This document shows, piece by piece, positions 516-34,830 of a DNA stretch of 64,000 bases (its first letter is position 1; each line of letters begins with the position of its first letter). Source of the stretch: Macrostomum lignano (taxonomy: Eukaryota); contig NIVC01001941.1 in the NCBI GenBank assembly GCA_002269645.1, forward strand, positions 1 to 64,000, written 5' to 3'. The translations under genes and the position numbers were made by a program. The notes under the pieces are model-generated. The model saw only the letters and a list, made by a program, of their open reading frames with translations, was not told the DNA's origin and did not search any database.

Positions 516-604
516 ACAATAAGTAGCTAGTGCGACAATTTCCTTAGCATTATAGTGGCTCCTTTAAAATTCGCTTACTTTTACGTTTGAAATTGTGTAA
601 ATTT

Positions 605-10610: not shown

Positions 10611-11448
10611 CTTTTTAAAAAGTCTTTTAGTTTTCCTGACGTTGAAAAGCTTTAATTAAAAAAATTATACTCTATGAAAATTCGAACCATCGTCGCTGCA
10701 TTTAGCAGCTCAGTTTGTTCACCTCTAGGCTAGCTCTCATCGTTTTGATAACATCAAATTTTGCACTTATATAATTCAACACTTGAAAATCCAAGCATAG
10801 AGTAAATTACACGAAGCAGTTATGACATAATCAGTTTCTCAGTCAGTCAGTATCAGTTAACAATATGCATGGTTACGCAATTTAAATCAAGTCTGGTGCT
10901 ACGCTTCCACACTGCATTTTCAATTCAAGTCGGAGTTACAATTCAGTTATGATGCAATCTATTTCAGAATCAGAATTCAACCAGTCAGTTTTTTCTCTAG
11001 CATTCTTACAATGCATTTCAAGTCGAAAAGTTTGCTTGACCTTTGCAAAAAAGCATGTTTTTCGAATATTTAATGCCTTTAGCATCGAGCAATTTCTTAG
11101 CCACGATGCATGTACAGTCACGGGAAAATTTCTGATTGAACAGTGCAAGTTCGAACAAAATCGGTCCAGCCATTTTTTCTCTAATCGATCACATAGACAC
11201 AGACAGACCATTTTTAGTATATAGGACTAGCAATCTACGCCCCCCGTTGGGGAGCCAAAGAAATGCAATACACGTTTTTTTAATAAGCTACATGTATCCT
11301 TGAAATCTTAAAAAATCTCCTGTCAAACCTTGTAAGCCTCGACATGTCAGTAATTCCCCCCCACAAGCTTTAACATATCAACTTCCCCCTTGACATCTCA
11401 GCAATGCCCCCAATAAGCCTTGGAAATCTAAAAATATCTGTCAACCTT

Positions 11449-12339: not shown

Positions 12340-13190
12340 CTTCATGTCTGACATGATGCTTCTTTTATTGTACCATGATGCTTCTTAATTTTTAAATGAC
12401 ACTTTCATTAGTTTTTAAATGAGGCTTCTATGATTTTTATATGACGCTTCTATGATTGTTTACATGACGCTTCTATGATTTTTACATGACGCTTCTATGA
12501 TTTTTACATGACGCTTCTATGATTGTTTACATGGCGCTTCTATGATTTTTTACATGACGCTTCTATGATTGTTTACATGACGCTTCTATGATTGTTTACA
12601 TGGCGCTTCTATGATTTTTTACATGACGCTTCTATGATTGTTTACATGACGCTTCTATGATTTTTTACATGACGCTTCTATGATTTTTTACATGACGCTT
12701 CTATGATTTTTTACATGACGCTTCTATGATTGTTTACATGACGCTTCTATGATTGTTTACATGACGCTTCTATGATTGTTTACATGGCGCTTCTATGATT
12801 TTTTACATGACGCTTCTATGATTTTTTACATGACGCTTCTATGATTTTTTCATGACGCTTCTATTATTGTTTACATGACGCTTCTATGATTGTTTACATG
12901 ACGCTTCTATGATTGTTTACATGACGCTTCTATGATTTTTTACATGACGCTTCTATGATTGTTTACATGACGCTTCTATGATTGTTTACATGGCGCTTCT
13001 ATGATTTTTTACATGACGCTTCTATGATTGTTTACATGACGCTTCTATGATTTTTTACATGACGCTTCTATGATTGTTTACATGACGCTTCTATGATTTT
13101 TTACATGACGCTTCTATGATTTTGTAAATGACGCATCTATGATTTTTTATATGACGCTTTTTTCTGATATTTTACATGATGCTTCTTTTT
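12340..13190. repeat. ATGACGCTTCTATGATT satellite
   Basis: Same unit as 9345-10610, shorter array. Confidence 0.95.
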
Positions 13191-17785: not shown

Positions 17786-18701
17786 AGGCCAGATAGTTGA
17801 CCAGGCCTAAGAACGAGCGCACCTCTGTGGCGGTCTTTGGCTCGGCAAATGCATGGATGGCTTCCAACTTGGACTGGGTTGGTCTGACACCTTCACTGGA
17901 CAGCTGCATCCCCATGAACGTGACCTCGGTACGGGCGAGCTTGCATTTTAACGGATTCAGCGTCAGCCCGTGCTGCGCCAGTCGTCGCAGACATGCCTGC
18001 AGGTTGCTGTGGTGCTCCGCCACGCTGTGCCCATACACGATGATGTCGTCGTGAATCCATTTTACTTTCGGGAGTCCAGCTAGCACGGATGACATGACCG
18101 CCTGGAGAATTTCCTGGGCCGTAGACAGTCCCATACAGAGCCGTGTCAGCCGCCGCAGGCCTCGTGGTGTCGAAAAAGTCAGAAGATGGCGGCATTCGTC
18201 GGCGACTGGGATTTGATAAAATGCCTTCGCGATGTCGAGCTCTGAGAATAGCTGCGCTCCTGCCATGTCTCCCGTCACCTCCTCGAATGTCGGGATGGGA
18301 TGCCGCTCTCTGATGACCGACTTGTTCAGGTCTCTCAAGTCCTGCGTAATCCTGATCTCGCCTGGAGTCTGCTTGGGCACGACGACGATGCGGGCTACCC
18401 ACGGACAGGGGCCTTCCACCGGCTCGATGATGCCTTGGTCCTCGAGGCACTGCAGCTCGGCGTCGACTGCCTGTGCGAGATGTATTGGCACCCTTGATGG
18501 GGGATGACAGATCGGCTTGGCTCCCTCCTCCAGGAAGATGCGGGCGGCATAGTTTTTGAGCCTGCCGATTCCGCTGAAGACTTGTGCGTTCTCCGTTAGG
18601 AGTTCGTGCAGGGCCGGTGCCCCGGCGCATGTAGGACGTCCTTTGGGATCCCTGTTAGCATGCTGTCTAGCGAGACCTCGGGAGACGGACGCAGCTGGCA
18701 T
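17760..18701 (-). CDS. Pol: reverse transcriptase
   Basis: PWVARIVVVPK, RITQDLRDLN, FSELDIAKAFYQIP and WIHDDIIVYG (Mag-type xxDD). Confidence 0.93.
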   Translation of the reverse strand: MPAASVSRGLARQHANRDPKGRPTCAGAPALHELLTENAQVFSGIGRLKNYAARIFLEEGAKPICHPPSRVPIHLAQAVDAELQCLEDQGIIEPVEGPCPWVARIVVVPKQTPGEIRITQDLRDLNKSVIRERHPIPTFEEVTGDMAGAQLFSELDIAKAFYQIPVADECRHLLTFSTPRGLRRLTRLCMGLSTAQEILQAVMSSVLAGLPKVKWIHDDIIVYGHSVAEHHSNLQACLRRLAQHGLTLNPLKCKLARTEVTFMGMQLSSEGVRPTQSKLEAIHAFAEPKTATEVRSFLGLVNYLASFTPGWRM

Positions 18702-19911
18702 GCCACCTTGTTCTCCGGGCCGACTCGCAGAATCTGAAGTCTTTCAGCGCTTCTCCGGCCAATGATGCAAGCGCCCTCACCGTCGAGCACCAAGAACGGT
18801 AGTGTCTCGTGGATCTCGAACACGCTGACTTGCAGGTCTGCCTTGCCCAGCAATCTCAGCGGCTCTTGGCTTCCGTATGGGTAGACCTTGTCGCTGGCGG
18901 GCTGCAGCGCGGCTTTTTGCGGCATCCTGTCGTAGGCCGCCCTGTCGATGATGTTGCAGGCCGCGCCGCTGTCGATGAGCACCTTTGTCTTGAGCCCGTT
19001 AATTGTCGCAGGCGTCCAAGTAGAGCCGTAGTTCCTCAGGGTGAATAGCTCGTGCTCGATGGGGTCGTCTTGCAGATATTCGACTCGACCCGGCGGAGCC
19101 TCCTCCTGCGGTTCGTCAACGGTCCTCAGAGGGACTTTAGCTGCTCCTCGACACGCCCGAGCGAAATGACCCATCTTGCCGCAGCGTCGACACGCCTTGT
19201 TACGGGCTGCCTCGCACGTCTGATGCCCTGGTCGCCCGCAGCGATCGCAGTTGATGCCGCTGTCTCTTGCCGCGGCAGCCGGCCTGGTTGTATGGGATGG
19301 TCGGTTACGAGGTGGACGCAGCGCCGCCACATTCGAAGCGGAAGGATGGCCCGTGTCGGCTGCGGCGCCGATCTCCATGGCCTGGGCCTGCTGCTCCGCT
19401 GCCTCCCTCGCTCGGATTCGCTTCAAAACGTCGTCTAAGGAGACATCGTTGAGCTGCAGGAGTTCCCTCCTGATCCTCTCGGACCGGTAATGAGCCACGA
19501 TCTTGTCCCTGATGAGCGAGTCTCGGAGTTCGCCGAACGTACATTGGTCCGCAGCCTTGCGTAGCCGATGATACCAGGCCTCAATTGACTCTCCTTCCTC
19601 CTGCCGGCATATTTCAAACTGGTACCTGAGGAAGACAACGCTGTTCTTTTGGTCGAAGATACCCTGCAACTTTTTGATGAGCTCCTCCGCGGACTCTCCT
19701 TTCTTGACGCCGTTATCGTCCATGAAGTCTTCCAGCTTCTCGCCCGCAGTGTAAACTAAGAGCTCCAGCTGCTGTGTCGCATCTGTGATGCCAGCTGCGC
19801 GTATGTAGCTGTGAACCTTCGCGTCCAGGTTTTCCATCGCTGAGCTCTTGTCAGAGGATCGCCTTCGAGGTCAAAGGCGTCTGGTGCCGCGAGTTGCAGG
19901 GCCTGTGCCAT
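18596..19911 (-). CDS. Gag (two CCHC knuckles) plus aspartic protease
   Basis: CDRCGRPGHQTC and CRRCGKMGHFARAC knuckles; LIDSGA protease. The probable ATG at 19911 (MAQALQLAAPDAFDLEGDP...RWKTWTRRF) is joined by a 1-nt frameshift near 19815. Confidence 0.9.
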
Positions 19912-20057: not shown

Positions 20058-20243
20058 NNNNNNNNNNNNNNNNNNNNNNNNNNNNNNNNNNNNNNNNNNN
20101 NNNNNNNNNNNNNNNNNNNNNNNNNNNNNNNNNNNNNNNNNNNNNNNNNNNNNNNNNNNNNNNNNNNNNNNNNNNNNNNNNNNNNNNNNNNNNNNNNNNN
20201 NNNNNNNNNNNNNNNNNNNNNNNNNNNNNNNNNNNNNNNNNNN
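20058..20243. other. Assembly gap (186 N)
   Basis: Run of N truncating the 5' LTR. Confidence 1.
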
Positions 20244-20572: not shown

Positions 20573-21687
20573 TTATTTTCTGTCTTGATATGGTAGAAGA
20601 AACAGAAACACTGCTGCGTTAAGTCCACTGACAACAAGGTAGCTGATAAAACAAATACTATTTTTCTGTTTAATACAGAACTCAACGCAGTCGAAAAAGA
20701 TCTTAGGGCTTCGTTCACTTCGCCTTGATTGCCTTGGAGAAACAACGGTCAGGAAGTGTGAACGCGATGAGGATGAGCATCTGAGCCATGAGGAAACAGA
20801 CCGATAGCGGGATCGTGTTCATGGACTTCGGAGCCGACTGGGACGCGATCAGCACGTACAGAGTCATGGACATGATGATGGCGATGGACAGTTCACCGGG
20901 TCGCTCTTGTCACCAGCCAGGAACATGATGCTTGCGAGCAGACAGCAGCTCGAACGGACAATCACCGCACAGCGTAGTACATCCACCTGCGCTTCAGGTG
21001 GAACTTGATCTCGGTGCAAGGAAACGATTGACCATTGATAACATTAGTGCGATTGTGCTGCGATAGCTCGTTCAAATTCCACTCCCCAACTTGGTAGGAC
21101 ACTCCGTCTATCTTGTTGATCGATAAGGTGCTTAAGCACTCGAGTCAGAAGTGATGAAATAGTGCAAAGCTGATGTCTGATGTCAACTGCGCATGCAGAC
21201 CGAATCACCAGGTACACGTAGGCGTACACGAGGCCGGAGGGAAACACCGTCACTTCCAAGAGGCCAGAATTTCGAATGTCGTACAAGCTCTCCTCCTTGC
21301 TGTTCCAGAAGCCAATGTCTGGCAGCCACAGGCTGTTCCGCTCCACTCGCAGTTGATCCAATTGGCTTTCGGATGCGTTCCAAGCCAGTCTTGGTCAGTC
21401 CAGCTGATGAAGGTCCAACCGGACCACTCCAGCAGCTCGTTCTCTCCGAGTCCGTAAATGGTCTTGATCGATATGACTATCTCGACGTTCGTATTGTAGC
21501 CAAAGTTTTTGGGAGACAGTATGACGTGGCACTGCGGCAGCGACTGCGGCCCGATGGACTCCGCCAGAGCCCGGCATGCTGCCTTGTCTGCGTTGGAGGC
21601 TGGACTGATGGCGGTCAAGCGTAAAAAAGCGCTGCTCCCCATTACCAGCAACAGTCGAAAGATTACAGACCTAAGACAGGTGAGCAT
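20573..21687 (-). pseudogene. Atypical nAChR-like Cys-loop channel, copy A (disrupted, or low-quality sequence)
   Basis: Homologous to 22265-23434 (CRALAESIGPQSLPQCH, WLPDIGFWNS, M1-M3, M4 CFISYLVVSGLNAAVF). Multiple 1-2-nt deletions and a deletion inside the Cys-loop (CAVDIR-HQLC). Confidence 0.8.
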
Positions 21688-22264
21688 GGCTACGATTTGT
21701 TACTGAATATCCACGACTTTAAAAAAAATTTATAAGCTTAGAGTTTCCTTGCCTTGAGACCTGATTTTTATTCGTATAAATTCGTTAGCTCTGATTCGCT
21801 GCGAAGCCAGCTGACGCAAAACTATCCAGCATCCTTTTTCTTTCTATCTAGCAAAGGAGGTTAGAGCCAATCTCAAATCTTCAAGTTGTATAGCTTATAA
21901 CTCACTTTAAATGGGATTTTCGCAATATGGAAGGCTTTAATTTTTTTGTACAATACGCTGTAGAACAGTTTTGAAACAATAGTTTCTACTACTATTAGTA
22001 GCAATGCAAGTGGTGAAGAGTGATGAAGCTACTTTTATGGTTTAAGTTAAGTAGCATATTAAGAACGCTTGATAAAAGCGAAGCACTGAATAGAAGATGA
22101 GGAGGGCAAAGTTTCCTGATTGGTGCGAATCTGCTGGGCGGCAAACTCTTAACTATATTTGTCACCGTTTAAAGCTACCGAAGCTTCCCACTTCCCAGCA
22201 GCTTTGCATTCGATCCATTTAGAGAAATCCAATTGTCAGACGTTCTGAAGATACTTACTGTAGA

Positions 22265-23434
22265 ATGCAGCACCTGATTCAGCCAGCCAGATTCATTCTG
22301 TTGCACTGTTTTCTGATTGTCGTCCCCCCGCCGTCGGCCACCATCGATCCGGCCTCGAACGTCAACGTAGCCGCGTGCCGCTCACTGGCCGAGTCCATCG
22401 GACCGCAGTCGCTGCCGCAGTGCCACGTCATGCTGTCGCCAAGCCATTTCGGCCACGAAAACAGCGTCGCTGTTAAAATACTACTGAAGACCATCTACGG
22501 TCTGGACGACAAGGAGCTGCTGGAGTTCTCTGCCTGGATTGAGCTGACATGGACCGACCCTCGGCTGGCCTGGAACTCATCAGCTAGAGGCAGTCCACGG
22601 TACATGCGCATCGACAGGAACAGTCTGTGGCTTCCTGACATCGGCTTTCTGAATTCCAAGGGCGAGATGTTCGACATTAGAAACGCGAAATTCTCTGACG
22701 TAGTTCTTAGTGCATCAGGAGAAGCGTTTATTTACGCATTTTGCGTGGTCCAATTCGCATGCGCCCTTGATGTGAGATCCTTCCCGTTTGACAGCCAGGT
22801 TTGCGCAACCCAACTGGCCACAGTTACATCTGACGTAGCTGCACTCAACTTTTCGGCAAGGGTGAGCTACAACTACTCGGAAGACAGTGGACTCGAGCTG
22901 TACCAAGTTGGCGAATGGATCCTGCAGTCTGTTGATCATAAATCATACTTTTTTACTGCAAATGGCGCTATCTACCCGGTAGTCAACATCAAGTTCCACC
23001 TGAAGCGCAGGTGGATGTACTACGCTGTGCTGGTGATTGTCCCGTTCGAGCTGCTGTCGCTGCTCGCAAGCATCATGTTCCTGGCTGGTGACAAGAGCGA
23101 CCCGGTGAACCTGTCCATCGCCATCATCATGTCCATGACTCTGTACGTGCTGATCGCGTCCCAGTCGGCTCCGAAGTCCATGAACACGATCCCGCTAGTC
23201 GGTCTGTTCCTCATGGCTCAGATGCTCATCCTCATCGCGTTCACCTTCATCGCTGCTTTCCCTGGCAGACAGCAGGTTGCGAGCCGTGAAAGTGCAAAGG
23301 TGACGAAAAGCTGCTGGACCTTCTTGTTTCGCCACCGGGCTGTTGTGAGCAGCTGCGCCTACCTGCTGCTCAGCGGGGTGAACGCGCTCGTTTTCATCTA
23401 TGTCTGGCCCGCCCACCTGAGCGCCGATAAGTAG
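22265..23434 (+). CDS. Intronless atypical nicotinic-receptor-like (Cys-loop) ligand-gated ion channel, copy B, 389 aa
   Basis: Signal peptide, WTDPRLAW, WLPD, C-x13-C loop CALDVRSFPFDSQVC, GEW motif, four TM helices with a very short M3-M4 loop; no vicinal Cys in loop C. Confidence 0.92.
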   Translation: MQHLIQPARFILLHCFLIVVPPPSATIDPASNVNVAACRSLAESIGPQSLPQCHVMLSPSHFGHENSVAVKILLKTIYGLDDKELLEFSAWIELTWTDPRLAWNSSARGSPRYMRIDRNSLWLPDIGFLNSKGEMFDIRNAKFSDVVLSASGEAFIYAFCVVQFACALDVRSFPFDSQVCATQLATVTSDVAALNFSARVSYNYSEDSGLELYQVGEWILQSVDHKSYFFTANGAIYPVVNIKFHLKRRWMYYAVLVIVPFELLSLLASIMFLAGDKSDPVNLSIAIIMSMTLYVLIASQSAPKSMNTIPLVGLFLMAQMLILIAFTFIAAFPGRQQVASRESAKVTKSCWTFLFRHRAVVSSCAYLLLSGVNALVFIYVWPAHLSADK

Positions 23435-24336
23435 CTGCACTCTTAGCCACGATTTTTTCTTAAATAGAGCAAAAAGTTTGTCAATTTCTGACAAAAGTGA
23501 GATCGGATATCGATATTAACTTTTTTAACGAACTGTTTGACTTGAAATAGTACTATTGAGGAACTCTCAGCAACAGTAGTCCATTTAGCAAGTTATTGCT
23601 ACTGTGCCGTCAACTACTACGAGTACTACTATACCACTACAATTTAAGCTTGATTGCACCGACAATTGAATTCTCGGTTCGTTCATTTACCCAAAAATAC
23701 AACACTACGAGAGTATGCACCGCGTGCACTAAATCCTACCTACGTTGATTGTCATTGCTGTGCTGTAATAGCTGGTTCTTTGCATGTTATATTGTTTCAA
23801 TTGTTTCAATATGGCCCACCTGTCCGATCAACCAATCAAAGTTTGCAATTACAGTATAGTATTTTGATCTTGATCTATTTTGATCTAAAAAACTGCTGCA
23901 AATATTCAAACAAGCATGCAGCTCTCTACCATTTTACGCGAACAAATAAAGAAACTTTATCTGTTACATAAGAAAACATGCAGCAGGTTCTGACGGGTCC
24001 TTGCATGAATTAGTTTTAGATTTATTTTACTAATCGGGGTCGTATCACTAAAACGTGTATTATTGCAATATTAGTTAGTTAATGCTTTATTCGACTTTGT
24101 ACTAAGTTAAGAAACAGTACAAATGAGATGCGCGCTAACTACGAGCATATTAGCTGAAATATAAATAAGCCATTGGAATCGTGCATTCGAAAAATTATTT
24201 CCGAACTTCAAAGATTGAGTTGACTGAGTTGAAGCATTTGTTTTGCAAAATTCTGTCACCATGATTTCTCATTGAAACATTCACCACTAATTGCCGAAAG
24301 TTTTGGAGTTCAAATTGTCCTTTAAAAGCTACTTGG

Positions 24337-25429
24337 TCATATAAACAAAAATGCGCATGCATTGCAGACACTTGCTGCAATGTAGCAGCCACGTTTCTGT
24401 GTTGCAATAGAACTGTCTTCCAGCCTCGCTTTCTATGCTCAGCCTCCGGTTTGTGAGCAGCTGATCTATCTGTTTTGTTCTGAGCGGCTGCGATGAAGGT
24501 GAACGCGATGAGGATGGACTTCGGAGCCGACTGGGACGCGATCAGCACGTACAGAGTCATGGACATGATGATGGCGATGGACAGGTTCACCGGGTCGCTC
24601 TTATCACCAGCCAGGAACATGATGCTTGCGAGCAGCGACAGCAGCTCGAACGGGACAATCACCAGCACCATATAATACGTGAACCTTCGCTTCAGGTGAA
24701 GGAAAAGCCTCACAATTTTGAATTACTGCCCACCAATAGAGTCGATCATGTCCGTTTGGGAAATATTTTTCAAGTCCCATTCACTGACAGTTGACGAAGA
24801 CTGTTCCGAATCAATATTCTCTTCAAATATATTTTGCACTGTAATATTGAACACAGTCAAGTCCGAAGATATCGTGCCGATTTGAATGGAGCAGACTTGG
24901 AAACTTGAGCAGACTTGCGCGTCGAATGGAAACTTGGCGACTTGTATGATGCAGGCAAATTGGACTACAAAGAAGATAGAGAGCTTAACCTCACAATTTG
25001 GGAACACTGTGGCGTCCTGAAATTTTGTATTTCGTACGTCATACGAAAGCTCTCAGCTTTCCTTCGTATTCCAGAATCCAACATCCGGCAGCCACGAGCT
25101 GTTTTTCTCCACCTTAGCTGCTTCGGTGGACTTTCCGTTGAGTTCCAGGCTAGCCGGGGGTCAGTCCAGGTCATCTGAATACATCCAGAAAACTCCTGAA
25201 GCTCCTCGTCCGGGCCGTATATAGTCTTCACATGGAGCATCAAGTCAACAACACAATATTTGTACCGTAGCCACAGTGCTTGGGTGACAGCTTGACGCGA
25301 CTGCGCACCGATGGACTCCGACAGAGCGCGACAGGCGGCCACTTCAGCGTCGGCAGCCCATTCAGTGCTGGCTGATACCAGCAAGACTGCGTGGCTCAGA
25401 AGAATCCGGAATTGCGCCAGTGAAGACAT
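24337..25429 (-). pseudogene. Atypical nAChR-like Cys-loop channel, copy C (pseudogene)
   Basis: WTDPRLAWN, CIIQVAKFPFDAQVC and EW are present. Several frameshifts, and a 48-bp deletion near 24516 removes MNTIPLVGLFLMAQML (M2-M3 loop and M3). Confidence 0.85.
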
Positions 25430-25689
25430 GGTAAGTTAAAGACTTTCATTCTGGTGTTCTGCTTATAGATGACACGAACGCCAGCCATTACTCTCCCAGT
25501 CTCTAATTCATGCAGGGTCGGCAAAGGTTCCAACTCTCCTCTCCTCTCTCTCCTCTCATGTCGGGCAACATGCGGCCCGCAGAGCCTCTCTATCCGACCC
25601 TCGGATCTTTTGAAACTTCACAATGTACTGCATCCGGCCCACAAGCAATCAAGCAATCCGGCCCACTCAATTTTTATATCGCTTCTCAG

Positions 25690-26400
25690 CACTCTTCTCT
25701 CTAATCTCCTCTCTACTCTCTTCCTCTCTCCTCTCTTCTCTTCTCTATCATGTCTTCTCTCCTCTCTCCTCTCATCTCCTCTCCTCCTCTCTTCTCTCTC
25801 CTCTCTCCTCTCTCCTCTCTTCTCTTCTCTATCATGTCTTCTCTCCTCTCTCCTCTCATCTCCTCTCCTCCTCTCTTCTCTCTCCTCTCTCCTCTCCTCC
25901 TCTCTTCTCTCTCCTCTCTCCTCTCTCCTCTCTCCTCTCATCTCCTCTCCTCCTCTCCTCTCCTCCTCTCCTCTCCTCCTCTCCTCCTCTCTCCTCTCTC
26001 CTCTCTCCTCTCTCCTCTCTCCTCTCTTCTCTCTCCTCTCATCTCCTCTCCTCCTCTCCTCATCTCCTCTCTCCTCTCTCCTCTCTCCTCTCTCCTCTCA
26101 TCTCCTCTCCTCCTCTCCTCTCCTCCTCTCCTCCTCTCTTCTCTCTCCTCTCATCTCCTCTCCTCCTCTCTTCTCTCTCCTCTCATCTCCTCTCCTCCTC
26201 TCCTCATCTCCTCTCTCCTCCTCTCCTCTCCTCCTCTCCTCCTCTCTTCTCTCTCCTCTATTCTCACTCATTTTCTCTCCTCCTGTCCTCTCTTTTCTCC
26301 CTCCTTTCTCCACTCCTCTCTTCTCCTTTATTATCTCACCTCTCCTTTCTCTTACCTCCCTTCTCTCTTCTTTATTTCCTCTCCTCTCTCCCCTCCTCTG
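25690..26400. repeat. CT-rich (CTCTC/CTC) microsatellite
   Basis: Pure pyrimidine low-complexity tract. Confidence 0.95.
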
Positions 26401-28029
26401 GGCCCACAGTCAGTCTCTAGGTTCTCTATCTGGCTCGTCAAATATTTAAATTTCCTATTTGTCACATTATTCATTAAGTTTTCAGTAGAAAATCATCCAA
26501 CAGTAGTTCAGCTTCTGCCCACTTGTTAAGCTTGGTGGCTCTGATGTTTGCAACATGTGATCTGGCCCTGTAGTCTGTGGGCGTGTGTTTGAAAACTGCT
26601 GCATGTTTGACCAGTAGGTTTGCTTTGGCGCAGTCTGCTATGGATGAGGCTGACTGTTGACCAGCACATTCAATAATTGGCATATGGTAAATGGATTAAA
26701 AATTACGAGCGCTATGCTTGGACCTTAGCAACAGAATCCAGTGGAAATAGATGTACAAGCCGTAAGAGCCGTAAGAGTTTTTGCTGCGTCAAAAGTCAAG
26801 ACCATCGGCTAACTTTTTCTTGCGCACCTTCGCAAACGATAATCAAGTCACCAACCCTCCGGACCATCGAGATATTCATAAGCGCCAGTGCATTCAATAC
26901 AGCCCTGTGCGCCAACCAGCGCTGCGCCTCAGCGCAGCCTTGCCAAGCCTCCAAATTTCACCAGCACATCTCTGCATCAGCTCTGACTTCTTTGGTCACT
27001 GGTCTTTACTCAGGCGGATCCTTCCAGGGTGGCACCCGGTGACTATGGACACCCTGTGCAAGTTTCTCTGAGTTCGCTGATCAAGCCTCGGCAGTAGGCA
27101 AGCCTCAACTGCTGGACATCCTCAGCTAGTCTCTCCAGAATTCCGTCATCACCCCGACGCTGTCGGTACCTTCAACAGGTGGCACTGTGGGCAATAGAGC
27201 AATACCTTTAATGAGTAATACGATCAATTACAGTGTATAGCAATCTTTATATTTTACCTATTCGGGCGACGTAAATAATTAATCAGGTTTGAAAAAAGCT
27301 ATAGAAAAGCGAAGACGCACTGCATGATGACTGGGTTCATATGAGCGGCACTTGCTCTGAATTTTAAATCCATACTACTCACCAAATGAGTAGAAAGCTT
27401 TAAAAAATCGGCCACTTTGAGTGTACACGTTTTGGCTTGGGAACACGTCTTTTCAGTTGATACTTTTAAGTTTATATCGGCAAAAGTAGGAAAGTAGATG
27501 ATGAGTTGTAATGCAGGTGATCCCGTAAAAGCTAGTGGAAATTGCGTAGAAGATAAGTATGCATTGAGTTCAGTGAGTGAACAGAAAAGTACTCCTTTCA
27601 ACAAGTAATTCTTTATAGTTGTCAATAGTCTTTGCTTGAAGAACTTTAACCAGACCTGACAAGACATCTCCATTCAAACGGAGCATTTCTTTTGATCGGA
27701 TGGCTGCCGCAACACAGCTGTTATTTGGACATAACCAAACTTGGCAAATAGACTCGTCCTAAGAACACTGTGACAGTAGCATTTAGTGTCTTGAGAGCAG
27801 AACCCGATGCCAGTGCAAATATTGCTAAGACACTGGGATCATATATGACGAGAGAATGAGCTCTGCGCCATCCTGAGCAGATCTTCATCGTTAAGCCCGG
27901 AACTCTTTTCTGTCGCCGTTCATAATTCATATCTCGTGTCATTTATACTAACATAACATGAACATACACCAGCCCCGCCTGTCCCCAAAGGGAAGACTCA
28001 GTTCAATCCACTATCCACTATTGGGAACA

Positions 28030-28375
28030 TTTTTATTAGAGGCAGGCGCTGTGTGCACCTAAGTGACATTGTCACACAACCGGCGAGAGGCATTGCTGCC
28101 CATTCCGCCGACTCCCCTGAGCAGGCACACAAGCGCGGATACGTACACAGTCATACGCGCAGGCACACACTCACACAGGAGTGTACAGCGGCCCTAACTT
28201 TATTTATCGTTAGGCATGTACACTTCACTGTGCCTTGGGGTCGGCCCTCAAGGCCGTTAATTGCACGAGCAGAGCCAAGCCGCGATTCCAATTTAGCCCC
28301 AAATTAATGTGACTGCACTTGGAATCGAACCTGGACCGCTGACACGGGCCAGGCTACGGCCCACTGACTATCGGG
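28030..28375 (-). mobile_element. tRNA-derived SINE copy
   Basis: B-box GGTTCGATTCC (plus ggaatcgaacc at 28321). Body shared with 34670-34830, 39285-39575, 40400-40530 and 62815-63105; tail ...CTCTAATAAAAA. Confidence 0.75.
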
Positions 28376-28932
28376 AATTAACAGAATTTGATCCAATGTA
28401 ATCATATTCTCCATATATTTGGACAATTGGGCAAAACTGGTTTGCAACTGCGAAAAAAAGGCTATTCCATAGAGAATCGTCCTTTAATGTTCATGGAGAT
28501 AGATGTACTCAGCAGACTAAAAAATACTGCGAAAACTAAGGACTCATTATTTGCCAATAGAAATGTCATTAATTGATGGGTGAAACAAGCCGTGACGAGC
28601 TGAGTGCCCCCCCCCCCCCTAGTCTAGAACAACCAGCATGCAGATAATTATTTACCTTGACAACGAGAGCGAGATCTGCAGCTCTGAAATGGAAATGCGG
28701 AAATGTTTTACCAAGCCAAACCTCTCGAGGAAGCTTGTGGAGATGAAAATGCAGCAAATAAAAGTTTAGAACCAACGCGTTAATCCCTCATCTCTATCCA
28801 TATATAGCACTGAGAGCAGAGCAGTTTAGCATGAATTAACTCGGGAAAGCAAAAAACTCTCACAAGACGCAAGATAAAAGCTCGACAAACGCAAATATTT
28901 GAGTTCAATACTTATCTACCGTTAATAAGCAT

Positions 28933-30087
28933 ATGAACCATCCCGGTGGCAACAAAATGTCTTCAACAGCAACATTACTGCTGCCTGTGCTGCTCTTGCT
29001 TGCGACTGTTTCAGAGTCAAACTCAGCAGCCAGCACTGATGCGGCCACTGCTGCGTGTCAAGCGCTGTCGGAGTCCATCGGTCCGCAGTCGCTGGCGCAG
29101 TGCCACACGTTGATGTACCCCAGCCAGTTCGGCTACCAAACGAACGTCAGCGTGCACATCTTGCTGAAAACTATCTACGGCCTGGACGAGAAGGAGCTGC
29201 TGGAGTTCTCCGCTTGGTTCCAGATTTCATGGACTGACCCTCGGCTGGCCTGGAATTCTTCAGCACCAGGCAGCCCACAGTACTTGCGAGTCGACCGGGG
29301 CAGCGTGTGGCTACCAGACGTTGGCTTCCTTAATTCGAAGGGCGAGATGTTTGACCTCCGAAACACCAAGTTCACTGACGCAGTAATTTTTCCTACTGGG
29401 GAAGTCGGCATTTACACATTCGCAGTTGTTCAGTTTGCCTGCGCCATCGATGTGAGATACTTCCCATTCGACACTCAGCTGTGCGCCACCCAACTCGGCA
29501 CCATATCGTCAGACACTTCCGGGTTCAAATTGTCGGTGTCTATCAGCTACAACAAATCAGAGAACCTGGGCCTGGATTTGTACCAGGTCGGCGAGTGGGA
29601 GCTGATAAGCGTTACTCATGAGCTTTCCCGATATGTGGCCGCTGGTGACAGCCTTTATGTCGCCAACATCAAGTTCCACCTGAAGCGCAAGTGGATGTAC
29701 TACGCTGTGCTGGTGATTGTCCCGTTCGAGCTGCTGTCGCTGCTCGCAAGCATCATGTTCCTGGCTGGTGACAAGAGCGACCCGGTGAACCTGTCCATCG
29801 CCATCATCATGTCCATGACTCTGTACGTGCTGATCGCGTCCCAGTCGGCTCCGAAGTCCATGAACACGATCCCGCTAGTCGGCCTGTTCCTCATGGCTCA
29901 GATGCTCATCCTCATCGCGTTCACCTTCATCGCTGCTCTAAAAGTCACTTATTCGTCTGCGACCTCGGAGGCGCCATCTAAACTGAAGAAACTGATTTTG
30001 TTTCTGTCAAAGCACAAAAATGTTGTCTGCTTTATAAGCTACATCAGCCTTACTATCATTAATATTATTGTGTTTGTATACATCTGA
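28933..30087 (+). CDS. Intronless atypical nAChR-like Cys-loop channel, copy D, ~376-384 aa
   Basis: Signal peptide (ATG 28933 or 28957), WLPDVGFLNS, CAIDVRYFPFDTQLC, GEW, M1-M4. Confidence 0.92.
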   Translation: MNHPGGNKMSSTATLLLPVLLLLATVSESNSAASTDAATAACQALSESIGPQSLAQCHTLMYPSQFGYQTNVSVHILLKTIYGLDEKELLEFSAWFQISWTDPRLAWNSSAPGSPQYLRVDRGSVWLPDVGFLNSKGEMFDLRNTKFTDAVIFPTGEVGIYTFAVVQFACAIDVRYFPFDTQLCATQLGTISSDTSGFKLSVSISYNKSENLGLDLYQVGEWELISVTHELSRYVAAGDSLYVANIKFHLKRKWMYYAVLVIVPFELLSLLASIMFLAGDKSDPVNLSIAIIMSMTLYVLIASQSAPKSMNTIPLVGLFLMAQMLILIAFTFIAALKVTYSSATSEAPSKLKKLILFLSKHKNVVCFISYISLTIINIIVFVYI

Positions 30088-30481
30088 CTTCAATTCATTT
30101 CTTTGCGCGCAAGAACCAACTGGTTTTATTGTTCTATGGTTTGGCTGTGAATCAGACGCTGCAACATCTCTTGACTTTGAAATTAAGAGAAAAACATCTC
30201 ATCCCTTCAGCCAAGATTCACTATGCGCTGGATTACTATGCCATGGGTTCTTTTCACAACGCTATTTTCCTCAATGCTTCCTCATTTATTTCGTAGAACG
30301 TGATATAATTAATTTTTTTTATTTTCATAAAGATTCATCATGTGTACATTTATGTAGAGATTCCACATTACTACGATTGTGCTTCAAGGCAATAGTGCAG
30401 CCTCATTAAAGCAGCTATTATCGCTAATGCGTATGTTGAGAAGATAAGTCAACTGACCCTGGGTCTAAAAGATGTGCCTAA

Positions 30482-30953
30482 GGGAACACGAGAATTTCCC
30501 GCCGGAAGTTTTCCCGCCGAGGCTTGCCCGCCGATATTTCCCCGCTGGAGGTTTCCCCGCTGGAGGTTTTCCCGCTGGAGGTTTCCCCGCTGGAGGTTTC
30601 CCCGCTGGAGGTTTCCCCGCTGGAGGTTTCCCCGCTGGAGGTTTCCGCGCTGAAGGTTTCCCGCTGGAGGTTTCCCCGCTGGAGGTTTCCGCGCTGGAGG
30701 TTTCCCGCTGGAGGTTTCCCCGCTGGAGGTTTCCCCGCTGGAGGTTTCCCCGCTGGAGGTTTCCCCGCTGGAGGTTTCCCCGCCGAGATTTCCCCGCAGG
30801 GTTTTTCCTGTCGGAATCTCAAGTCAAATCCAGTCTATAGACAATGCTGGACTAGATTAGAACTAGCCTAAGACTAGATTTCAAATCCAATTGGAAAAAC
30901 CCTGCGGGAAAACCTCCGCGGAAAAACTTCCTGCAGGAAACTCTCATAGACCC
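30482..30953. mobile_element. MITE-like element with an 8-bp target-site duplication and internal 15-bp repeats
   Basis: GTGCCTAA flanks both ends (30474-30481 and 30954-30961). Imperfect TIRs GGGaacacGAGAaTTTCC and GGGtctatGAGAgTTTCC; internal (CCCGCTGGAGGTTTC)n at 30540-30780. Confidence 0.7.
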
Positions 30954-32037
30954 GTGCCTAATAGCCTTCAAAAAACACAGAAATAGTAGCCAGGAGAGCA
31001 AACTGCCTATTTTAAGGCTAACCATAGCTAGAAATTGCCCTTCATTCGCAGCCTCATCGTTTTTTGCTTAACTGGGTGTCACAGATGCCGTTCTGGAAAA
31101 TTCCATCAACTAGAACCTCTAGTTTTTGAGGTAATTTGTATTTAAGCATGCACCATCCTAGGTTGGGCGCAGTTTACGTAACAATAGCATCATCATTAAC
31201 ATTCTTATTATTAATCTAAATATACTAATATTATTACTATTTCTACGATTATTATTGAAAACACGCTGAGGGTACTGGTATTTAATGATATTACTCGAGG
31301 CAAAAATTCAAAAAGCTAGTGAATAAAAATACTTTTCGACCTAACGGGAGTGAAATCTCGTGTTATTCATGCTTGTTTTCTTCTGTAACAATCTGAAGCC
31401 TCATGAAGTTGCTTTCTAGCTTGTGTCATGTCTTTGATGCAGTTTTCTAGGTAGCATTTCCATCATGTCTTCTTGAGTCATTAGGTAAAATATTTAATCT
31501 TCTGCAGTAAGGTTTTTTTAATTCGGAACTTTATCTGGGATTTCCTGTTCAAGTTTATCACGGAGAAGCACGATACAGTAAAAGTTCCAACTGCACTTAA
31601 AAAGTAACTGAACTTCACTTTCTACTCCCCACATGGCACTTTGAGCAGGTCAGCTGTTCTCCTAAGGGATCTTTGGTCTCGCAGTTCTCATTGTGTCGCA
31701 ACCCAGTTCATGGTTCGAACTCTTCTATCGGTAGAGATGTAGAACGTCCTCAATTTTCGGGACCAGAAAACTCTGCATTTGCTATCCGAGTGTTCAGATA
31801 ATAAGAAGCTGTCAATTACATTGCTTAATGACAGGAAAGTGTCATTTATTTTAATGTTGTATGGATGTTGTCTTTAGGCTTACTATGAGTAGTAACTATG
31901 AAATAAACTGCAATTGTACCAAGCAATATTATTATTAATCTGAGTAAGTGTAAAAAACGCTAGTCGAACTCTGTTGGCGGCTGAAGGCCTCAAATTTCTA
32001 AATTTTTATTGCATACTGCGAGACGAGCGCCAGCAAG

Positions 32038-33177
32038 ATGCGAACCTGTAAATGTATTCTGCCTCTGCTTCTACTAGTTCACAGTATCATGCGCTCAAGC
32101 GCCATCGACCCGGCAACAAACGCTGACGTGCCTGCGTGCCGCGCACTGGCGGAGTCCATCAGACCGCAGGCGCTGCCGCAGTGCCACGTCTTGCTGTCTC
32201 CGAGCTACTTCGGCTACCAAACAGACGTCAGGGTGTTGATTTATCTGAATACCATCTACGGCCTGGACGAAAAGGAGCTGCTGGAGTTCTCTGGCTGGAT
32301 TTGGATTTCCTGGACTGACCCTCGACTCGCCTGGAACTCGTCATCGCCGGGCAGCCCGCACCAGCTGCGTCTCCACAGAAACAGCCTCTGGCTACCGGAC
32401 GTCGAGTTCCTCAACTCCAAGGGCGAAATGTTCGCCGATGCTCTATTGTTTCCAACCGGAGAAGCTAGCATTTACACATTCGCAGTGGTGCAGTTCGCAT
32501 GCGCCATCGATGGGAGATACTTCCCCTTCGACAGTCAGCTGTGCGCTATTCAAGTCAGCACAGGAACGTCCGACGTCACGCATTTTAACCTATCGGTGTC
32601 TGTTTACTACAACAGCTCCACGTACGATGGGCTGGAACTTTCCCTGGTTGGCGAGTGGGATCTGGAGAAAGTGACTGGTGAACAGTCCAGAGAAAAGTCA
32701 CTTGACTTCAACTTTTATATGGTGGATTTACAATTCCACCTGAAGCGCAGGTGGATGTACTACGCTGTGCTGGTGATTGTCCCGTTCCAGCTGCTGTCGC
32801 TGCTCGCAAGCATCATGTTCCTGGCTGGTGACAAGAGCGACCCGGTGAACCTGTCCATCGCCATCATCATGTCCATGACTCTGTACGTGCTGATCGCGTC
32901 CCAGTCGGCTCCGAAGTCCATGAACACGATCCTGTTCGGTCTGTTCCTCATGATACAAATGCTCATCCTCATCGCGTTCACCTTCATTTCCGCTCTGAAA
33001 GCACACCCCTCATCTGCGCCCTCGGATGCGCCCTCAACGATCAGAAGACTTGGAAGGTTTTTAGCGAGTCACAAGAATGCAATCTGCTTCATCAGCTACA
33101 TCCTGCTCACGGCTGCAAACATAATCGCGCTTGGTTGGAACGCTGGAGCAGGATTTCCGAGTCAACAGAGGCTTTAA
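32038..33177 (+). CDS. Intronless atypical nAChR-like Cys-loop channel, copy E, 379 aa
   Basis: WLPDVEFLNS, CAIDGRYFPFDSQLC, GEW, M1-M4. Carries a 7-aa ECD deletion relative to D, and TILFG replaces TIPLVG. Confidence 0.9.
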   Translation: MRTCKCILPLLLLVHSIMRSSAIDPATNADVPACRALAESIRPQALPQCHVLLSPSYFGYQTDVRVLIYLNTIYGLDEKELLEFSGWIWISWTDPRLAWNSSSPGSPHQLRLHRNSLWLPDVEFLNSKGEMFADALLFPTGEASIYTFAVVQFACAIDGRYFPFDSQLCAIQVSTGTSDVTHFNLSVSVYYNSSTYDGLELSLVGEWDLEKVTGEQSREKSLDFNFYMVDLQFHLKRRWMYYAVLVIVPFQLLSLLASIMFLAGDKSDPVNLSIAIIMSMTLYVLIASQSAPKSMNTILFGLFLMIQMLILIAFTFISALKAHPSSAPSDAPSTIRRLGRFLASHKNAICFISYILLTAANIIALGWNAGAGFPSQQRL

Positions 33178-33724: not shown

Positions 33725-34492
33725 ATTGTCCATAGTTTTGGAGGCAGACAATGGTAGACTGTGCCTATGGTTTTGGAGGCAGACAATGGTCGATTGTGTC
33801 TATGGTTTTGGAGGCAGACAATGGTCGATTGTGTCTATGGTTTTGGAGGCAGACAATGGTAGATTGTGTCTATGGTTTTGGAGGCAGACAATGGTCGATT
33901 GTGTCTATGGTTTTGGAGCCAGACAATGGTCGATTGTGTCTATGGTTTTGGAGGCAGACAATGGTCGATTGTGTCTATGGTTTTGGAGGCAGACAATGGT
34001 AGATTGTGTCTATGGTTTTGGAGGCAGACAATGGTCGATTGTGTCAATGGTTTTGGAGGCAGACAATGGTAGATTGTGTCTATGGTTTTGGAGGCAGACA
34101 ATGGTCGATTGTGTCTATGGTTTTGGAGGCAGACAATGGTCGATTGTGTCTATGGTTTTGGAGGCAGACAATGGTCGATTGTGTCTATGGTTTTGGAGGC
34201 AGACAATGGTCGATTGTGTCTATGGTTTTGGAGGCAGACAATGGTCGATTGTGTCTATGGTTTTGGAGGCAGACAATGGTAGATTGTGTCTATGGTTTTG
34301 GAGGCAGACAATGGTAGATTGTGTCTATGGTTTTGGAGGCAGACAATGGTCGATTGTGTCTATGGTTTTGGAGGCAGACAATGGTAGATTGTGTCTATGG
34401 TTTTGGAGGCAGACAATGGTAGATTGTGTCTATGGTTTTGGAGGCAGACAATGGTAGATTGTGTCTATGGTTTTGGAGGCAGACAATGGTAT
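33725..34492. repeat. 35-bp satellite (TTTTGGAGGCAGACAATGGTCGATTGTGTCTATGG)n
   Basis: About 22 highly homogeneous copies. Confidence 0.97.
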
Positions 34493-34669: not shown

Positions 34670-34830
34670 ATTTTTATTAGAGGCAGGGGCTCCGTGTACC
34701 TTGGTGCACCTTCAGCGACATTGTCAACAACCGGCAAGAGGCATTACTGCCCATTCCGCCGACTCCCCTGAGCAGGCATACAAGCGCGCGGATACGTACG
34801 AAGTCATACGCACAGGCACACACTCACACG
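34670..34830 (-). mobile_element. 5'-truncated SINE copy
   Basis: Matches 28030-28170 (tttttattagaggcagg...ccattccgccgactcccctgagcaggca). Confidence 0.7.

What the first reader, a model, noticed from the sequence alone, without database searches (positions are those of the whole stretch)
20573..33177. Tandem cluster of five intronless, atypical nAChR-like channels: candidate lineage-specific chemoreceptor family
Seen: five paralogs in 13 kb (B, D, E intact; A, C disrupted), single-exon although neighbouring genes are intron-rich. Each has a C-x13-C loop, WxPD, GEW and four TMs. Against alpha7-type subunits, the loop-A Tyr is replaced (GFLN/GFWN), the loop-B Trp is missing (QLATVTSD, QLGTISSD, QVSTGTSD) and there is no vicinal Cys-Cys. 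Loop C differs in every copy (SYFFTANGAIYP, SRYVAAGDSLYV, SREKSLDFNFYM); the loop-D Trp is kept. Established: octopus chemotactile receptors are intronless, clustered, nAChR-derived, ACh-insensitive sensory channels. Inference: this is an independent, analogous sensory-receptor expansion in a non-cephalopod animal.
Basis: partly seen in the sequence, partly recalled or inferred. Interest (0 to 1): 0.88.

Follow-up and report, generated by a model that had tools for sequence, protein, structure and literature searches.

The report
Flatworm nicotinic-receptor-like channel gene cluster
A flatworm genome segment carries three working and two dead single-exon copies of a very divergent nicotinic-receptor-like ion channel; the ligand-binding halves have drifted far apart, the pore-forming part is kept almost base-for-base identical by gene conversion, and what the channels sense is unknown.

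Summary
Five nAChR-family paralogs lie at 20573-33177: B, D and E are intact single-exon ORFs of 379-389 aa, and A and C are pseudogenes. They have a Cys-loop, WxPD, GEW and four TM helices, and they lack the loop-A Tyr, the loop-B Trp and the vicinal Cys pair.

The closest relatives are flatworm proteins: Macrostomum lignano at 47% identity, then the trematode and monogenean 'AChR-related' Smp_012000-type subunits. The host is therefore a non-cephalopod lophotrochozoan, and the expansion is lineage-specific.

First, vertebrate muscle gamma, delta and epsilon subunits show the same pattern of lost residues, so the pattern marks a 'non-alpha' subunit, not ACh-insensitivity. Second, intronless tandem nAChR expansions are already documented in lophotrochozoans (Jiao 2019).

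One thing here is new. A block of about 265 nt encoding pre-M1 through M3 is 95-99% identical between the intact copies (dS 0.02-0.10). Its roughly 150-nt core is identical in all five copies, apart from one substitution each in C and E and indels in A. The ECD has dS of about 0.8-1.3 and the M4 tail is saturated. GC3 is 85-88% in the block against about 65% elsewhere, which points to domain-restricted, GC-biased gene conversion.

A sensory role stays plausible but is untested.

The parts
20573..21687 (-). Copy A, pseudogene of the nAChR-like family
   Evidence: tblastn HSPs lie in three frames; the FPFD half of the Cys-loop is deleted; there are several 1-2 bp indels. It lies 330 bp from an assembly gap (N run 20058-20243).
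22265..23434 (+). Copy B, intact single-exon gene, 389 aa
   Evidence: ORF; Pfam Neur_chan_LBD 8e-29; 64% aa identity to D.
24195..25429 (-). Copy C, pseudogene
   Evidence: Two in-frame stops, a frameshift near 25112-25130, an 18-nt duplication after the Cys-loop and a 48-nt deletion removing the M2-M3 loop and the start of M3.
28933..30087 (+). Copy D, intact single-exon gene, 384 aa (reference copy)
   Evidence: ORF; Pfam 3e-32; alpha7 1e-33; AF2 model with 4 TM helices and an M3-M4 linker of about 13 residues; Foldseek top hits are alpha7 and muscle nAChR.
32038..33177 (+). Copy E, intact ORF, 379 aa, with a 7-aa ECD deletion and loss of the conserved M2-M3 loop Pro
   Evidence: ORF; Pfam 2.5e-26; alignments show NTI-LFG in place of NTIPLVG.
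22993..23257 (+). Homogenised pore module (pre-M1, M1, M2, M3) in B
   Evidence: 99.2% nt identity to D against 69% in the ECD and 40% in the tail; dS 0.016; GC3 0.865.
29673..29937 (+). Homogenised pore module in D
   Evidence: Same evidence as for B. The longest identical run between B and D is 192 nt, against a null maximum of 45.
32733..32994 (+). Homogenised pore module in E (mosaic: a patch of about 35 nt in M2-M3/M3 differs)
   Evidence: 95-96% identity to B and D, with a 145-nt identical run.
24499..24702 (-). Pore-module block in pseudogene C (with the 48-nt deletion)
   Evidence: 185-nt arms are 94-95% complementary to B, D and E. The 132-nt core 24517-24648 (GTGCTGGTG...CCGAAGTC), which lies inside those arms, is identical to B and D apart from one C/T difference, even though C is dead.
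20758..21004 (-). Pore-module block in pseudogene A (only indels, essentially no substitutions)
   Evidence: 71-87 nt stretches are 100% identical to B, C and E; the differences are 1-2 bp indels.

Best explanation
This is a lineage-specific tandem cluster in a flatworm genome, most likely a macrostomid; the species could not be determined. [quoted passage not shown]

Shown: three copies (B, D, E) are selectively maintained single-exon genes and two (A, C) are pseudogenes, which is birth-and-death turnover. The paralogs are old (ECD dS about 1). The extracellular domain and the M4 tail evolve independently, with loops C, F and B changing fastest. The roughly 265-nt segment encoding pre-M1, M1, M2 and M3 is repeatedly copied between paralogs, including the dead ones, by GC-biased gene conversion. 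As a result every copy carries essentially the same pore.

Inferred: the proteins assemble as pentamers. They probably assemble as homomers or as mixtures of cluster members, which the identical transmembrane module would make mutually compatible. The channel is probably cation-selective, because the -1' residue is Asp, although the pore is unusual (0' Pro, 9' Met, 20' Gln). The intracellular loop is minimal, about 13 residues.

Inferred: because the principal-face aromatic residues (loop-A Tyr, loop-B Trp, the first loop-C Tyr and the Cys pair) are gone, these subunits cannot bind ACh in the canonical way at their own principal face. I consider it most likely that ligands other than ACh gate them at the variable ECD interfaces. 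Whether the ligands are external chemical cues or internal transmitters is open.

The confidence given (0.7) applies to the shown structural and evolutionary parts. The non-ACh gating step alone I put at about 0.5.
For: - Family and fold.
- Five copies and their state.
- Flatworm affinity: the best exhaustive-search hit is M. lignano A0A1I8I4U5 (47% identity, with a shared N-terminal DPATNADVPACRALA...CH motif). Next come Fasciola, Clonorchis, Opisthorchis, Dicrocoelium, Heterobilharzia, Schistosoma, Paragonimus and Cichlidogyrus. The TM block is 43-48% identical to these, against 30-33% to canonical nAChRs.
- Monophyly of B, D and E: 100% bootstrap.
- Purifying selection: ECD dN/dS 0.20-0.30.
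- Loop-wise pN/pS: loop C 0.79, F 0.50, B 0.43, scaffold 0.18-0.36.
- Gene conversion: block dS 0.016-0.10 against ECD dS 0.83-1.26; sharp edges, with the block present in both pseudogenes; longest identical runs 145-192 nt against a null maximum of 36-45, and 66-73 consecutive identical third positions against a null maximum of 27-28; GC3 0.85-0.88 in the block against 0.64-0.66 in the ECD.
- Pore residues against 220 relatives: 0' Pro in 2/220, 9' Met in 1/220, -1' Asp in 20/220.
- The coupling elements are kept in B and D: FPFD, the pre-M1 Arg and the M2-M3 Pro.
Against: - There is no expression, ligand or assembly evidence of any kind.
- The flatworm clade containing the trio has only 31% NJ bootstrap support, and the trio sits on a long branch.
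- The residue-loss pattern equally fits complementary subunits of ACh-gated heteromers.
- Near-identity of a multi-copy block could be inflated by consensus polishing of a long-read assembly. Copy A, next to an assembly gap, shows indel-only differences that look like sequencing errors.
- E lacks the conserved M2-M3 Pro and may gate abnormally.
Confidence: 0.7

Rival explanations
1. B, D and E are complementary ('structural', non-alpha) subunits. They co-assemble with alpha-type subunits encoded elsewhere, and the resulting channels are gated by acetylcholine. The paralogs would diversify the complementary face (loops D, E, F) and so the pharmacology or kinetics of cholinergic receptors. Loop C would then simply be unconstrained.
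For: Vertebrate muscle gamma, delta and epsilon subunits show exactly the same pattern: loop-A Tyr to Glu, loop-B Trp to Gln or Leu, no Cys-Cys, loop-D Trp kept. These subunits were the top hits of the word-based search. The loop-D Trp is invariant in B, D and E. Loop C has the highest pN/pS, as expected if it is unused.
Against: - The TM module is only 30-33% identical to canonical nAChR subunits and has an unusual M1 (VPF instead of IPC) and an unusual pore. That makes co-assembly with ordinary alpha subunits less obvious.
- There is no orthology to any known non-alpha subunit.
- The minimal intracellular loop lacks the region used for synaptic clustering.
- Loops F and B, not only C, evolve fast.
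Confidence: 0.3
2. The cluster is a chemosensory receptor family analogous to cephalopod chemotactile receptors: ACh-insensitive channels on peripheral sensory cells, gated by environmental (for example hydrophobic) molecules, and evolved independently from nAChRs.
For: - The genes are single-exon, tandemly clustered and show pseudogene turnover.
- The ACh-coordinating residues are lost.
- The pocket loops change fastest.
- The expansion is lineage-specific in a free-living-type flatworm lineage, while the parasitic relatives appear to have few copies.
- The literature shows that this evolutionary route exists (PMC11526382, PMC13174522).
Against: - All of the evidence is circumstantial, and other readings share it.
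- Only five copies are seen, so the genome-wide family size is unknown.
- Overall ECD dN/dS is 0.2-0.3 and no region exceeds 1.
- Similar expansions in bivalves have been linked to development, stress and immunity rather than to sensing (PMC6896357).
- Cephalopod CR structures were not among the 50 best structural matches.
Confidence: 0.25
3. The near-identical pore block is an assembly or polishing artefact. Reads from several paralogs were collapsed into a consensus, so there is no real concerted evolution.
For: - The window has an N gap next to copy A.
- Copy A's block differs from the others only by 1-2 bp indels, typical of long-read errors.
- The M. lignano homolog models all end exactly at the start of this block, as if assemblies break there.
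Against: - Copy-specific variants inside the block were resolved: E's Glu-to-Gln change, its 3-nt deletion and its 35-nt divergent patch; C's 48-nt deletion and C/T difference; the synonymous GGC/GGT difference between B and D.
- The edges coincide in all five copies with codon and domain boundaries.
- GC3 is raised to 0.85-0.88 specifically in the block. That is a long-term signature of biased gene conversion, which polishing would not create.
Confidence: 0.1
4. The copies are decaying retrocopies without function.
For: The genes are single-exon. Two of the five are clearly dead. E lacks a conserved gating Pro.
Against: B, D and E keep full ORFs despite ECD dS of 0.8-1.3, with dN/dS of 0.20-0.30. 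All coupling motifs are conserved in B and D.
Confidence: 0.03

Closest known systems
Expanded intronless, tandemly arrayed nAChR genes of lophotrochozoans (Jiao et al. 2019, PMC6896357)
   Same: Single-exon genes sit in tandem arrays with pseudogenes. Paralogs cluster by lineage, sequences are highly diverse, and the host is a lophotrochozoan.
   Different: That study described molluscs and annelids and analysed no flatworm. The subunits here have a minimal intracellular loop, an unusual pore (0' Pro, 9' Met) and a pore module homogenised by gene conversion. I did not see that last feature in the passages of that paper that I read.
Flatworm 'AChR-related' subunits of the Smp_012000 type (trematodes, monogeneans; PMC9874803, PMC6151654)
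   Same: These are the nearest relatives in both ECD and TMD (35% overall identity, 43-48% in M1-M3). They share the SMT(L/M)YV M2, the SxxAP(K/R)SM M2-M3 loop, Asp at -1' and the VPF motif in M1.
   Different: The trematode proteins keep the loop-B Trp (PWQSS), have Arg at 0' and Leu at 9', and carry a long intracellular loop. Each genus examined contributed only one or a few cluster representatives to the top hits; copy number was not measured. The clade has only 31% bootstrap support. Their function is also unknown.
Cephalopod chemotactile receptors (van Giesen 2020; Allard 2023; reviewed in PMC11526382)
   Same: Both derive from nAChRs, are intronless, lack the canonical ACh-binding residues and have a diversifying binding pocket.
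   Different: The window genes come from a different phylum and a different clade; CRs are a predominantly cephalopod clade (PMC13174522). Sensory expression and hydrophobic-ligand gating are demonstrated for CRs and are entirely untested here. No direct sequence comparison could be made.
Vertebrate muscle gamma/delta/epsilon (non-alpha, complementary) nAChR subunits
   Same: They show an identical pattern of lost principal-face residues with the loop-D Trp retained.
   Different: There is no orthology (about 25% identity). The muscle subunits have long intracellular loops and a canonical pore, are intron-rich and are not tandemly expanded.
Domain-restricted gene conversion in receptor families (e.g. 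vertebrate TLR1/6/10, PMC3125219)
   Same: In both, gene conversion homogenises the signalling or transmembrane module while the ligand-binding ectodomain diverges.
   Different: The protein family and fold are different. My literature searches found no description of this pattern for a pentameric ligand-gated channel cluster.
Alpo4, orphan nAChR-like receptor of Alvinella pompejana (PMC10338036; PDB 8bx5)
   Same: It is a lophotrochozoan orphan nAChR-like subunit without the loop-C Cys pair and with an unknown agonist. It matches copy D at 1e-26.
   Different: Alpo4 keeps the whole aromatic box, including the loop-B Trp. It is not a close relative.

Membership tests
Pentameric ligand-gated ion channels, Cys-loop/nAChR branch | Neur_chan_LBD extracellular domain | tested here: met
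   Pfam PF02931 scores 93-112 bits against a cut-off of 26 for B, D and E.
Pentameric ligand-gated ion channels, Cys-loop/nAChR branch | C-x13-C Cys-loop containing FPFD | tested here: met
   CA(I/L)D(V/G)R(Y/S)FPFD(T/S)Q(L/V)C in B, D and E, also present in C; the FPFD half is deleted in A.
Pentameric ligand-gated ion channels, Cys-loop/nAChR branch | Four transmembrane helices with an M2 pore helix | tested here: met
   The AF2 model has helices at 254-281, 284-305, 315-335 and 349-383. HMMER alignment to alpha7 runs through M3. Pfam PF02932 scores only 21-25 bits, below its 28.1 cut-off, which reflects the divergence.
Pentameric ligand-gated ion channels, Cys-loop/nAChR branch | Closer to nAChR than to the 5-HT3, GABA or GluCl branches | tested here: met
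   The top 60 PDB sequence hits and the top 34 structural hits are all nAChR subunits.
Alpha-type, ACh-binding nAChR subunit | Vicinal Cys-Cys at the tip of loop C | tested here: not met
   It is absent in all copies.
Alpha-type, ACh-binding nAChR subunit | Loop-B Trp (alpha7 W149) and loop-A Tyr (Y93) | tested here: not met
   The Trp is replaced by I, V or G and the Tyr by L.
Cephalopod chemotactile receptors | Membership of the cephalopod CR clade | not tested
   No CR sequence could be retrieved: CRs were not in the top 60 PDB sequence hits or the top 50 structural hits. The nearest relatives are flatworm proteins, so membership is very unlikely.
Cephalopod chemotactile receptors | Intronless, clustered genes lacking the ACh-binding residues | tested here: met
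   However, other nAChR expansions and non-alpha subunits share these features.
Cephalopod chemotactile receptors | Expression in peripheral sensory cells; gated by hydrophobic or environmental ligands and not by ACh | not testable with these tools
   This needs in situ or single-cell expression data and electrophysiology.
Lophotrochozoan expanded intronless nAChR genes (Jiao 2019) | Intronless or intron-poor genes in tandem arrays with lineage-specific paralog clustering | tested here: met
   There are five single-exon copies in 12.6 kb, and B, D and E are monophyletic at 100%.
Lophotrochozoan expanded intronless nAChR genes (Jiao 2019) | Origin by retroposition | tested here: inconclusive
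   No poly(A) remnant or flank homology remains: the flanks are fully diverged. Neighbouring genes also have very large exons, so intron-poverty may be a feature of the whole genome.
Flatworm Smp_012000-type 'AChR-related' clade | Groups with the trematode and monogenean members in a tree, with shared M2 and M2-M3 motifs | tested here: inconclusive
   The trio groups with them in NJ trees, but bootstrap support is 31%. The shared TM motifs and the highest TMD identity support the relationship.
Non-alpha complementary nAChR subunit (functional class) | Principal-face residues lost and the complementary loop-D Trp kept | tested here: met
   The pattern is the same as in Xenopus gamma, fish delta and gar epsilon.
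Non-alpha complementary nAChR subunit (functional class) | Obligate co-assembly with an alpha subunit | not testable with these tools
   This needs co-expression experiments.

The most novel reading that the evidence does not exclude
A flatworm has independently turned nAChR-type channels into a family of environmental chemoreceptors built on a 'variable head, constant pore' plan. Each gene carries its own diverging ligand-binding domain. GC-biased gene conversion between paralogs keeps one shared M1-M3 pore module identical, which would allow free mixing of subunits into heteropentamers with combinatorial ligand specificity.
Probability: 0.18. Interest if true: 0.8.

Novelty: new member of a known kind. 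Interest (0 to 1): 0.42.

Why it matters
If the channels prove to be ACh-insensitive and sensory, this would be a second, independent conversion of nicotinic receptors into chemoreceptors. It would come from a tractable flatworm model group and bear directly on how neurotransmitter receptors become sensory receptors.

Independently of function, the cluster is a clean natural example of modular evolution within one gene. The pore domain evolves in concert, while the ligand-binding domain and M4 diverge. This is relevant to how subunit compatibility is kept in expanding channel families.

It also matters for genome assembly and annotation: identical internal blocks can break gene models, as the truncated M. 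lignano models suggest.

The relatives in parasitic flatworms (Smp_012000 type) are uncharacterised candidate drug targets, so a free-living model for the clade would be useful.

Tried and rejected
- The word-indexed protein search returned only distant vertebrate and mollusc nAChRs and missed the flatworm relatives. Only the exhaustive HMMER search found them.
- The exact-sequence look-up of D and of the M. lignano hit gave no contigs, so the source species and any orthologous locus could not be examined.
- The Logan contig for P0091 (L001) could not be assigned to an organism, nor shown to be genomic rather than a transcript.
- Two metagenome scans, one with the B/D/E alignment and one with the pore-block peptide, found nothing. 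One attempt failed for lack of conserved columns.
- I tried to bring a cephalopod CR sequence into the comparison through PDB searches and the structural search. All failed, because the lists are saturated by vertebrate nAChRs.
- The van Giesen 2020 paper is not held.
- P0154 (M. lignano) turned out to be a fused GluCl/GABA-like protein with a PAR motif and is irrelevant.
- The upstream 200 bp of the five copies share no motif.
- Apart from one 62-nt element, there is no flank homology beyond the CDS.
- No Rfam family or tRNA is present in the window.
- No LTR pair was found for the adjacent retrotransposon.
- The literature searches found no report on Macrostomum nAChR expansion or on gene conversion in pLGIC clusters.

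Full report
**1. What is there**

The region 20573-33177 contains five homologous coding units and no others in the 64-kb window (tblastn). Three are complete ORFs on the + strand:
- B, 22265-23434, 389 aa
- D, 28933-30087, 384 aa
- E, 32038-33177, 379 aa

Each starts with a Met and a hydrophobic leader and ends with a stop after a fourth hydrophobic helix. All three match Pfam Neur_chan_LBD (1e-26 to 1e-32) and align with human alpha7 from beta1 through M3 (E = 1e-33, about 28% identity). An AlphaFold2 model of D (mean pLDDT 78.7, pTM 0.68) has the beta-sandwich, four TM helices and an M3-M4 linker of only about 13 residues. Its best structural matches are alpha7 and muscle nAChR chains.

The two minus-strand copies are pseudogenes:
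- C (24195-25429) has two in-frame stops, a frameshift, an 18-nt duplication after the Cys-loop and a 48-nt deletion that removes the M2-M3 loop.
- A (20573-21687) has lost the FPFD half of the Cys-loop and has many 1-2 bp indels. It lies 330 bp from an assembly gap (N run 20058-20243), so some of its indels may be sequence errors. The Cys-loop deletion makes it a pseudogene in any case.

**2. The residue claims**

In HMMER and MAFFT alignments against alpha7-type sequences:
- the loop-A Tyr is Leu (Trp in A and in the M. lignano homolog);
- the loop-B Trp is Ile, Val or Gly;
- there is no vicinal Cys pair;
- loop C is different in every copy;
- the loop-D Trp is invariant;
- the second loop-C Tyr (alpha7 Y195) is also kept.

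The Cys-loop (C-x13-C with FPFD), WLPD, GEW, the pre-M1 Arg and the M2-M3 loop Pro are all present in B and D. E lacks the conserved Pro of the M2-M3 loop (NTI-LFG in place of NTIPLVG) and has a 7-residue ECD deletion.

One element is weak: the contrast with 'intron-rich neighbours'. The neighbouring P450 has Pfam positions 116-459 in one exon, and the C2-domain gene is one 355-aa ORF. Only the FSIP1-like gene visibly has two or more exons. Large exons may simply be usual in this genome.

**3. Whose genes are they?**

The word-indexed search found only distant vertebrate and mollusc nAChRs at 24-30% identity, with muscle gamma, delta and epsilon subunits prominent. The exhaustive HMMER search of 1.84 billion representatives gave a different picture. 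The best hit was a Macrostomum lignano protein: 47% identity, E = 8e-66, and the same N-terminal DPATNADVPACRALA...CH motif with two extra cysteines.

Next came an unnamed Logan transcript or contig (38%), followed by the 'nAChR subunit' or 'AChR-related' proteins of Fasciola, Clonorchis/Opisthorchis, Dicrocoelium, Heterobilharzia, Schistosoma, Paragonimus and the monogenean Cichlidogyrus. By its Cys-loop sequence, this trematode group corresponds to Smp_012000 (PMC6151654). PMC9874803 notes that Smp_012000 has Asp instead of Glu before M2.

The pore module points the same way. It is 43-48% identical to these flatworm proteins and 30-33% identical to canonical nAChRs.

In neighbour-joining trees of 223-258 domains, B, D and E are monophyletic (100%) and sit in a flatworm-only group. 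That group has only 31% bootstrap support, and the trio is on a long branch.

I conclude that the window comes from a flatworm, most probably a macrostomid. The species could not be determined. The minisatellite-rich sequence is compatible with that group from my own knowledge, but it is not a test.

**4. The new feature: a homogenised pore module**

Codon alignment shows that the segment from FHLKR (pre-M1) to FTFIA (end of M3) is almost identical at the nucleotide level. Its coordinates are B 22993-23257, D 29673-29937 and E 32733-32994.

| Comparison | Pore block | ECD | Post-M3 tail |
|---|---|---|---|
| B-D nt identity | 99.2% | 69% | 40% |
| B-E and D-E nt identity | 95-96% | 67-72% | 40-60% |

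Both pseudogenes also carry the block (C 24499-24702, A 20758-21004). Its core of about 150 nt is identical in all five copies, apart from one substitution each in C and E and indels in A.

Nei-Gojobori estimates are dS 0.016-0.10 in the block against 0.83-1.26 in the ECD, and saturation in the tail. The longest identical runs are 145-192 nt, where permutation gives at most 36-45. For third codon positions alone the runs are 66-73, against at most 27-28 (p < 2e-4).

Purifying selection cannot explain silent-site identity, and it cannot explain identity in dead copies. The pattern is mosaic: E has a divergent 35-nt patch, and in C the identical tract starts about 35 nt downstream of where it starts in the other copies. 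GC3 is 0.85-0.88 in the block against 0.64-0.66 in the ECD. This is the expected footprint of recurrent GC-biased gene conversion, and it also argues against a polishing artefact. Copy-specific variants resolved inside the block argue the same way.

An artefact still cannot be fully excluded without reads. The three M. lignano gene models all stop exactly where the block begins, which may reflect an assembly break at a repeated block.

**5. Selection on the rest of the gene**

B, D and E are old duplicates (ECD dS about 1) that have been kept as coding genes (ECD dN/dS 0.20-0.30). Within the ECD, pN/pS is highest in loop C (0.79). Loops F (0.50) and B (0.43) follow, against 0.18-0.36 for the scaffold and the Cys-loop.

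This fits either relaxed constraint or diversifying selection on the binding pocket. Three sequences cannot separate the two. The flanks share no homology, so nothing can be said about retroposition.

**6. The pore**

M2 reads S(-2') D(-1') P(0') V N L S I A I I M(9') S M T L Y V L I A S Q(20'). Among 220 related domains:
- Pro at 0' occurs twice (K or R in 217);
- Met at 9' occurs once (Leu in 198);
- Asp at -1' occurs 20 times.

The acidic -1' residue suggests cation selectivity; this follows from established knowledge of the selectivity filter, as summarised in PMC9874803. The other features are unusual and their effect is unknown.

**7. How it most likely works, and the rivals**

Shown: this is a maintained, lineage-specific, divergent nAChR-family cluster. 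The ECDs turn over by birth and death, and the pore evolves in concert.

Inferred: the subunits form pentameric, probably cation-permeable channels. The shared TM module would keep cluster members mutually compatible. The missing principal-face aromatic residues rule out canonical ACh binding at their own principal face.

The main rival is that they are complementary subunits of ACh-gated heteromers. Two things count against this rival: the very derived TMD and the missing intracellular loop.

The chemoreceptor reading is compatible with everything seen, but nothing specific supports it. I put it at about 0.2-0.25.

**8. Comparison with what is known**

Intronless, tandem, lineage-specific nAChR expansions with diverse sequences are established for molluscs and annelids (PMC6896357). 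Divergent clades with substituted binding residues are catalogued across Mollusca, with the CRs a predominantly cephalopod clade (PMC13174522). Orphan lophotrochozoan nAChR-like receptors such as Alpo4 have been studied structurally (PMC10338036). The finding is thus a new member of a known kind, in a phylum where my searches found no prior description.

Domain-restricted gene conversion is known in other receptor families, for example TLR1/6/10 (PMC3125219). My searches found no description of it for a pLGIC cluster.

**9. Verdict**

Interest is moderate (0.42). It would rise sharply if expression and electrophysiology showed a sensory, non-cholinergic role.

Noticed in passing
window 15907-19837 (-): An apparently intact Ty3/gypsy-type retrotransposon lies directly next to the cluster, beyond the assembly gap. 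Its ORFs encode gag with a zinc knuckle plus aspartic protease (18596-19837), RT (17760-18701) and RNase H plus integrase (15907-17682). The region is about 60% GC in an otherwise 35-48% GC neighbourhood. No LTR pair was found within 12.5-21 kb.
   Followed up: partly
window 20058-20243: A run of 186 N (an assembly gap) lies 330 bp beyond the 3' end of pseudogene A. The left edge of the cluster, and the quality of copy A, are therefore uncertain.
   Followed up: partly
window, throughout (e.g. 602-3359, 4813-7556, 9374-10612, 12374-13186, 33727-34490, 36666-37643, 41671-42503, 55619-57477): The density of long minisatellite arrays is extraordinary: periods of 12-46 nt and up to 155 copies, many at 90-99% identity. 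The arrays fill much of the intergenic space and create long spurious ORFs.
   Followed up: no
window 28076-28137 and 34727-34788: A 62-nt sequence is repeated at 95% identity, once upstream of D and once downstream of E. It is the only non-coding similarity detected around the cluster.
   Followed up: no
window 49816-50970 (-): A cytochrome P450 gene (Pfam 4.5e-72) has profile positions 116-459 in a single exon of about 1.15 kb. The N-terminal part must lie in GC-rich sequence upstream (about 51 kb).
   Followed up: partly
window 40590-41657 (+); 58937-59410 and 61193-62464 (-): A single-ORF C2-domain protein (355 aa) is present, together with two exons of an FSIP1-like (fibrous sheath-interacting protein) gene. 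The larger FSIP1-like exon is partly overlaid by a 32-nt tandem array.
   Followed up: partly
window 32038-33177 (copy E), residues about 305-315 and about 140: E has lost the highly conserved Pro of the M2-M3 loop through a 3-nt deletion (NTI-LFG in place of NTIPLVG). It also lacks 7 residues between loops A and E. It may gate differently from B and D, or be on its way to inactivation.
   Followed up: partly
window: D residues 42 and 57 (29056-29106), with equivalents in B, E, A and the M. lignano homolog P0068: Two extra conserved cysteines (AAC...QCH) sit in the N-terminal segment before beta1, within a stretch that also has low silent divergence (pS 0.31). This may be an additional disulfide specific to this subfamily. 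The AF2 confidence there is low.
   Followed up: no
P0068, P0218, P0219 (M. lignano UniProt models): All three homologous M. lignano gene models end at the same residue (…LLPFEM), exactly where the homogenised block begins in the window. This suggests that an assembly or annotation break is caused by a repeated pore-module sequence in that genome too.
   Followed up: no
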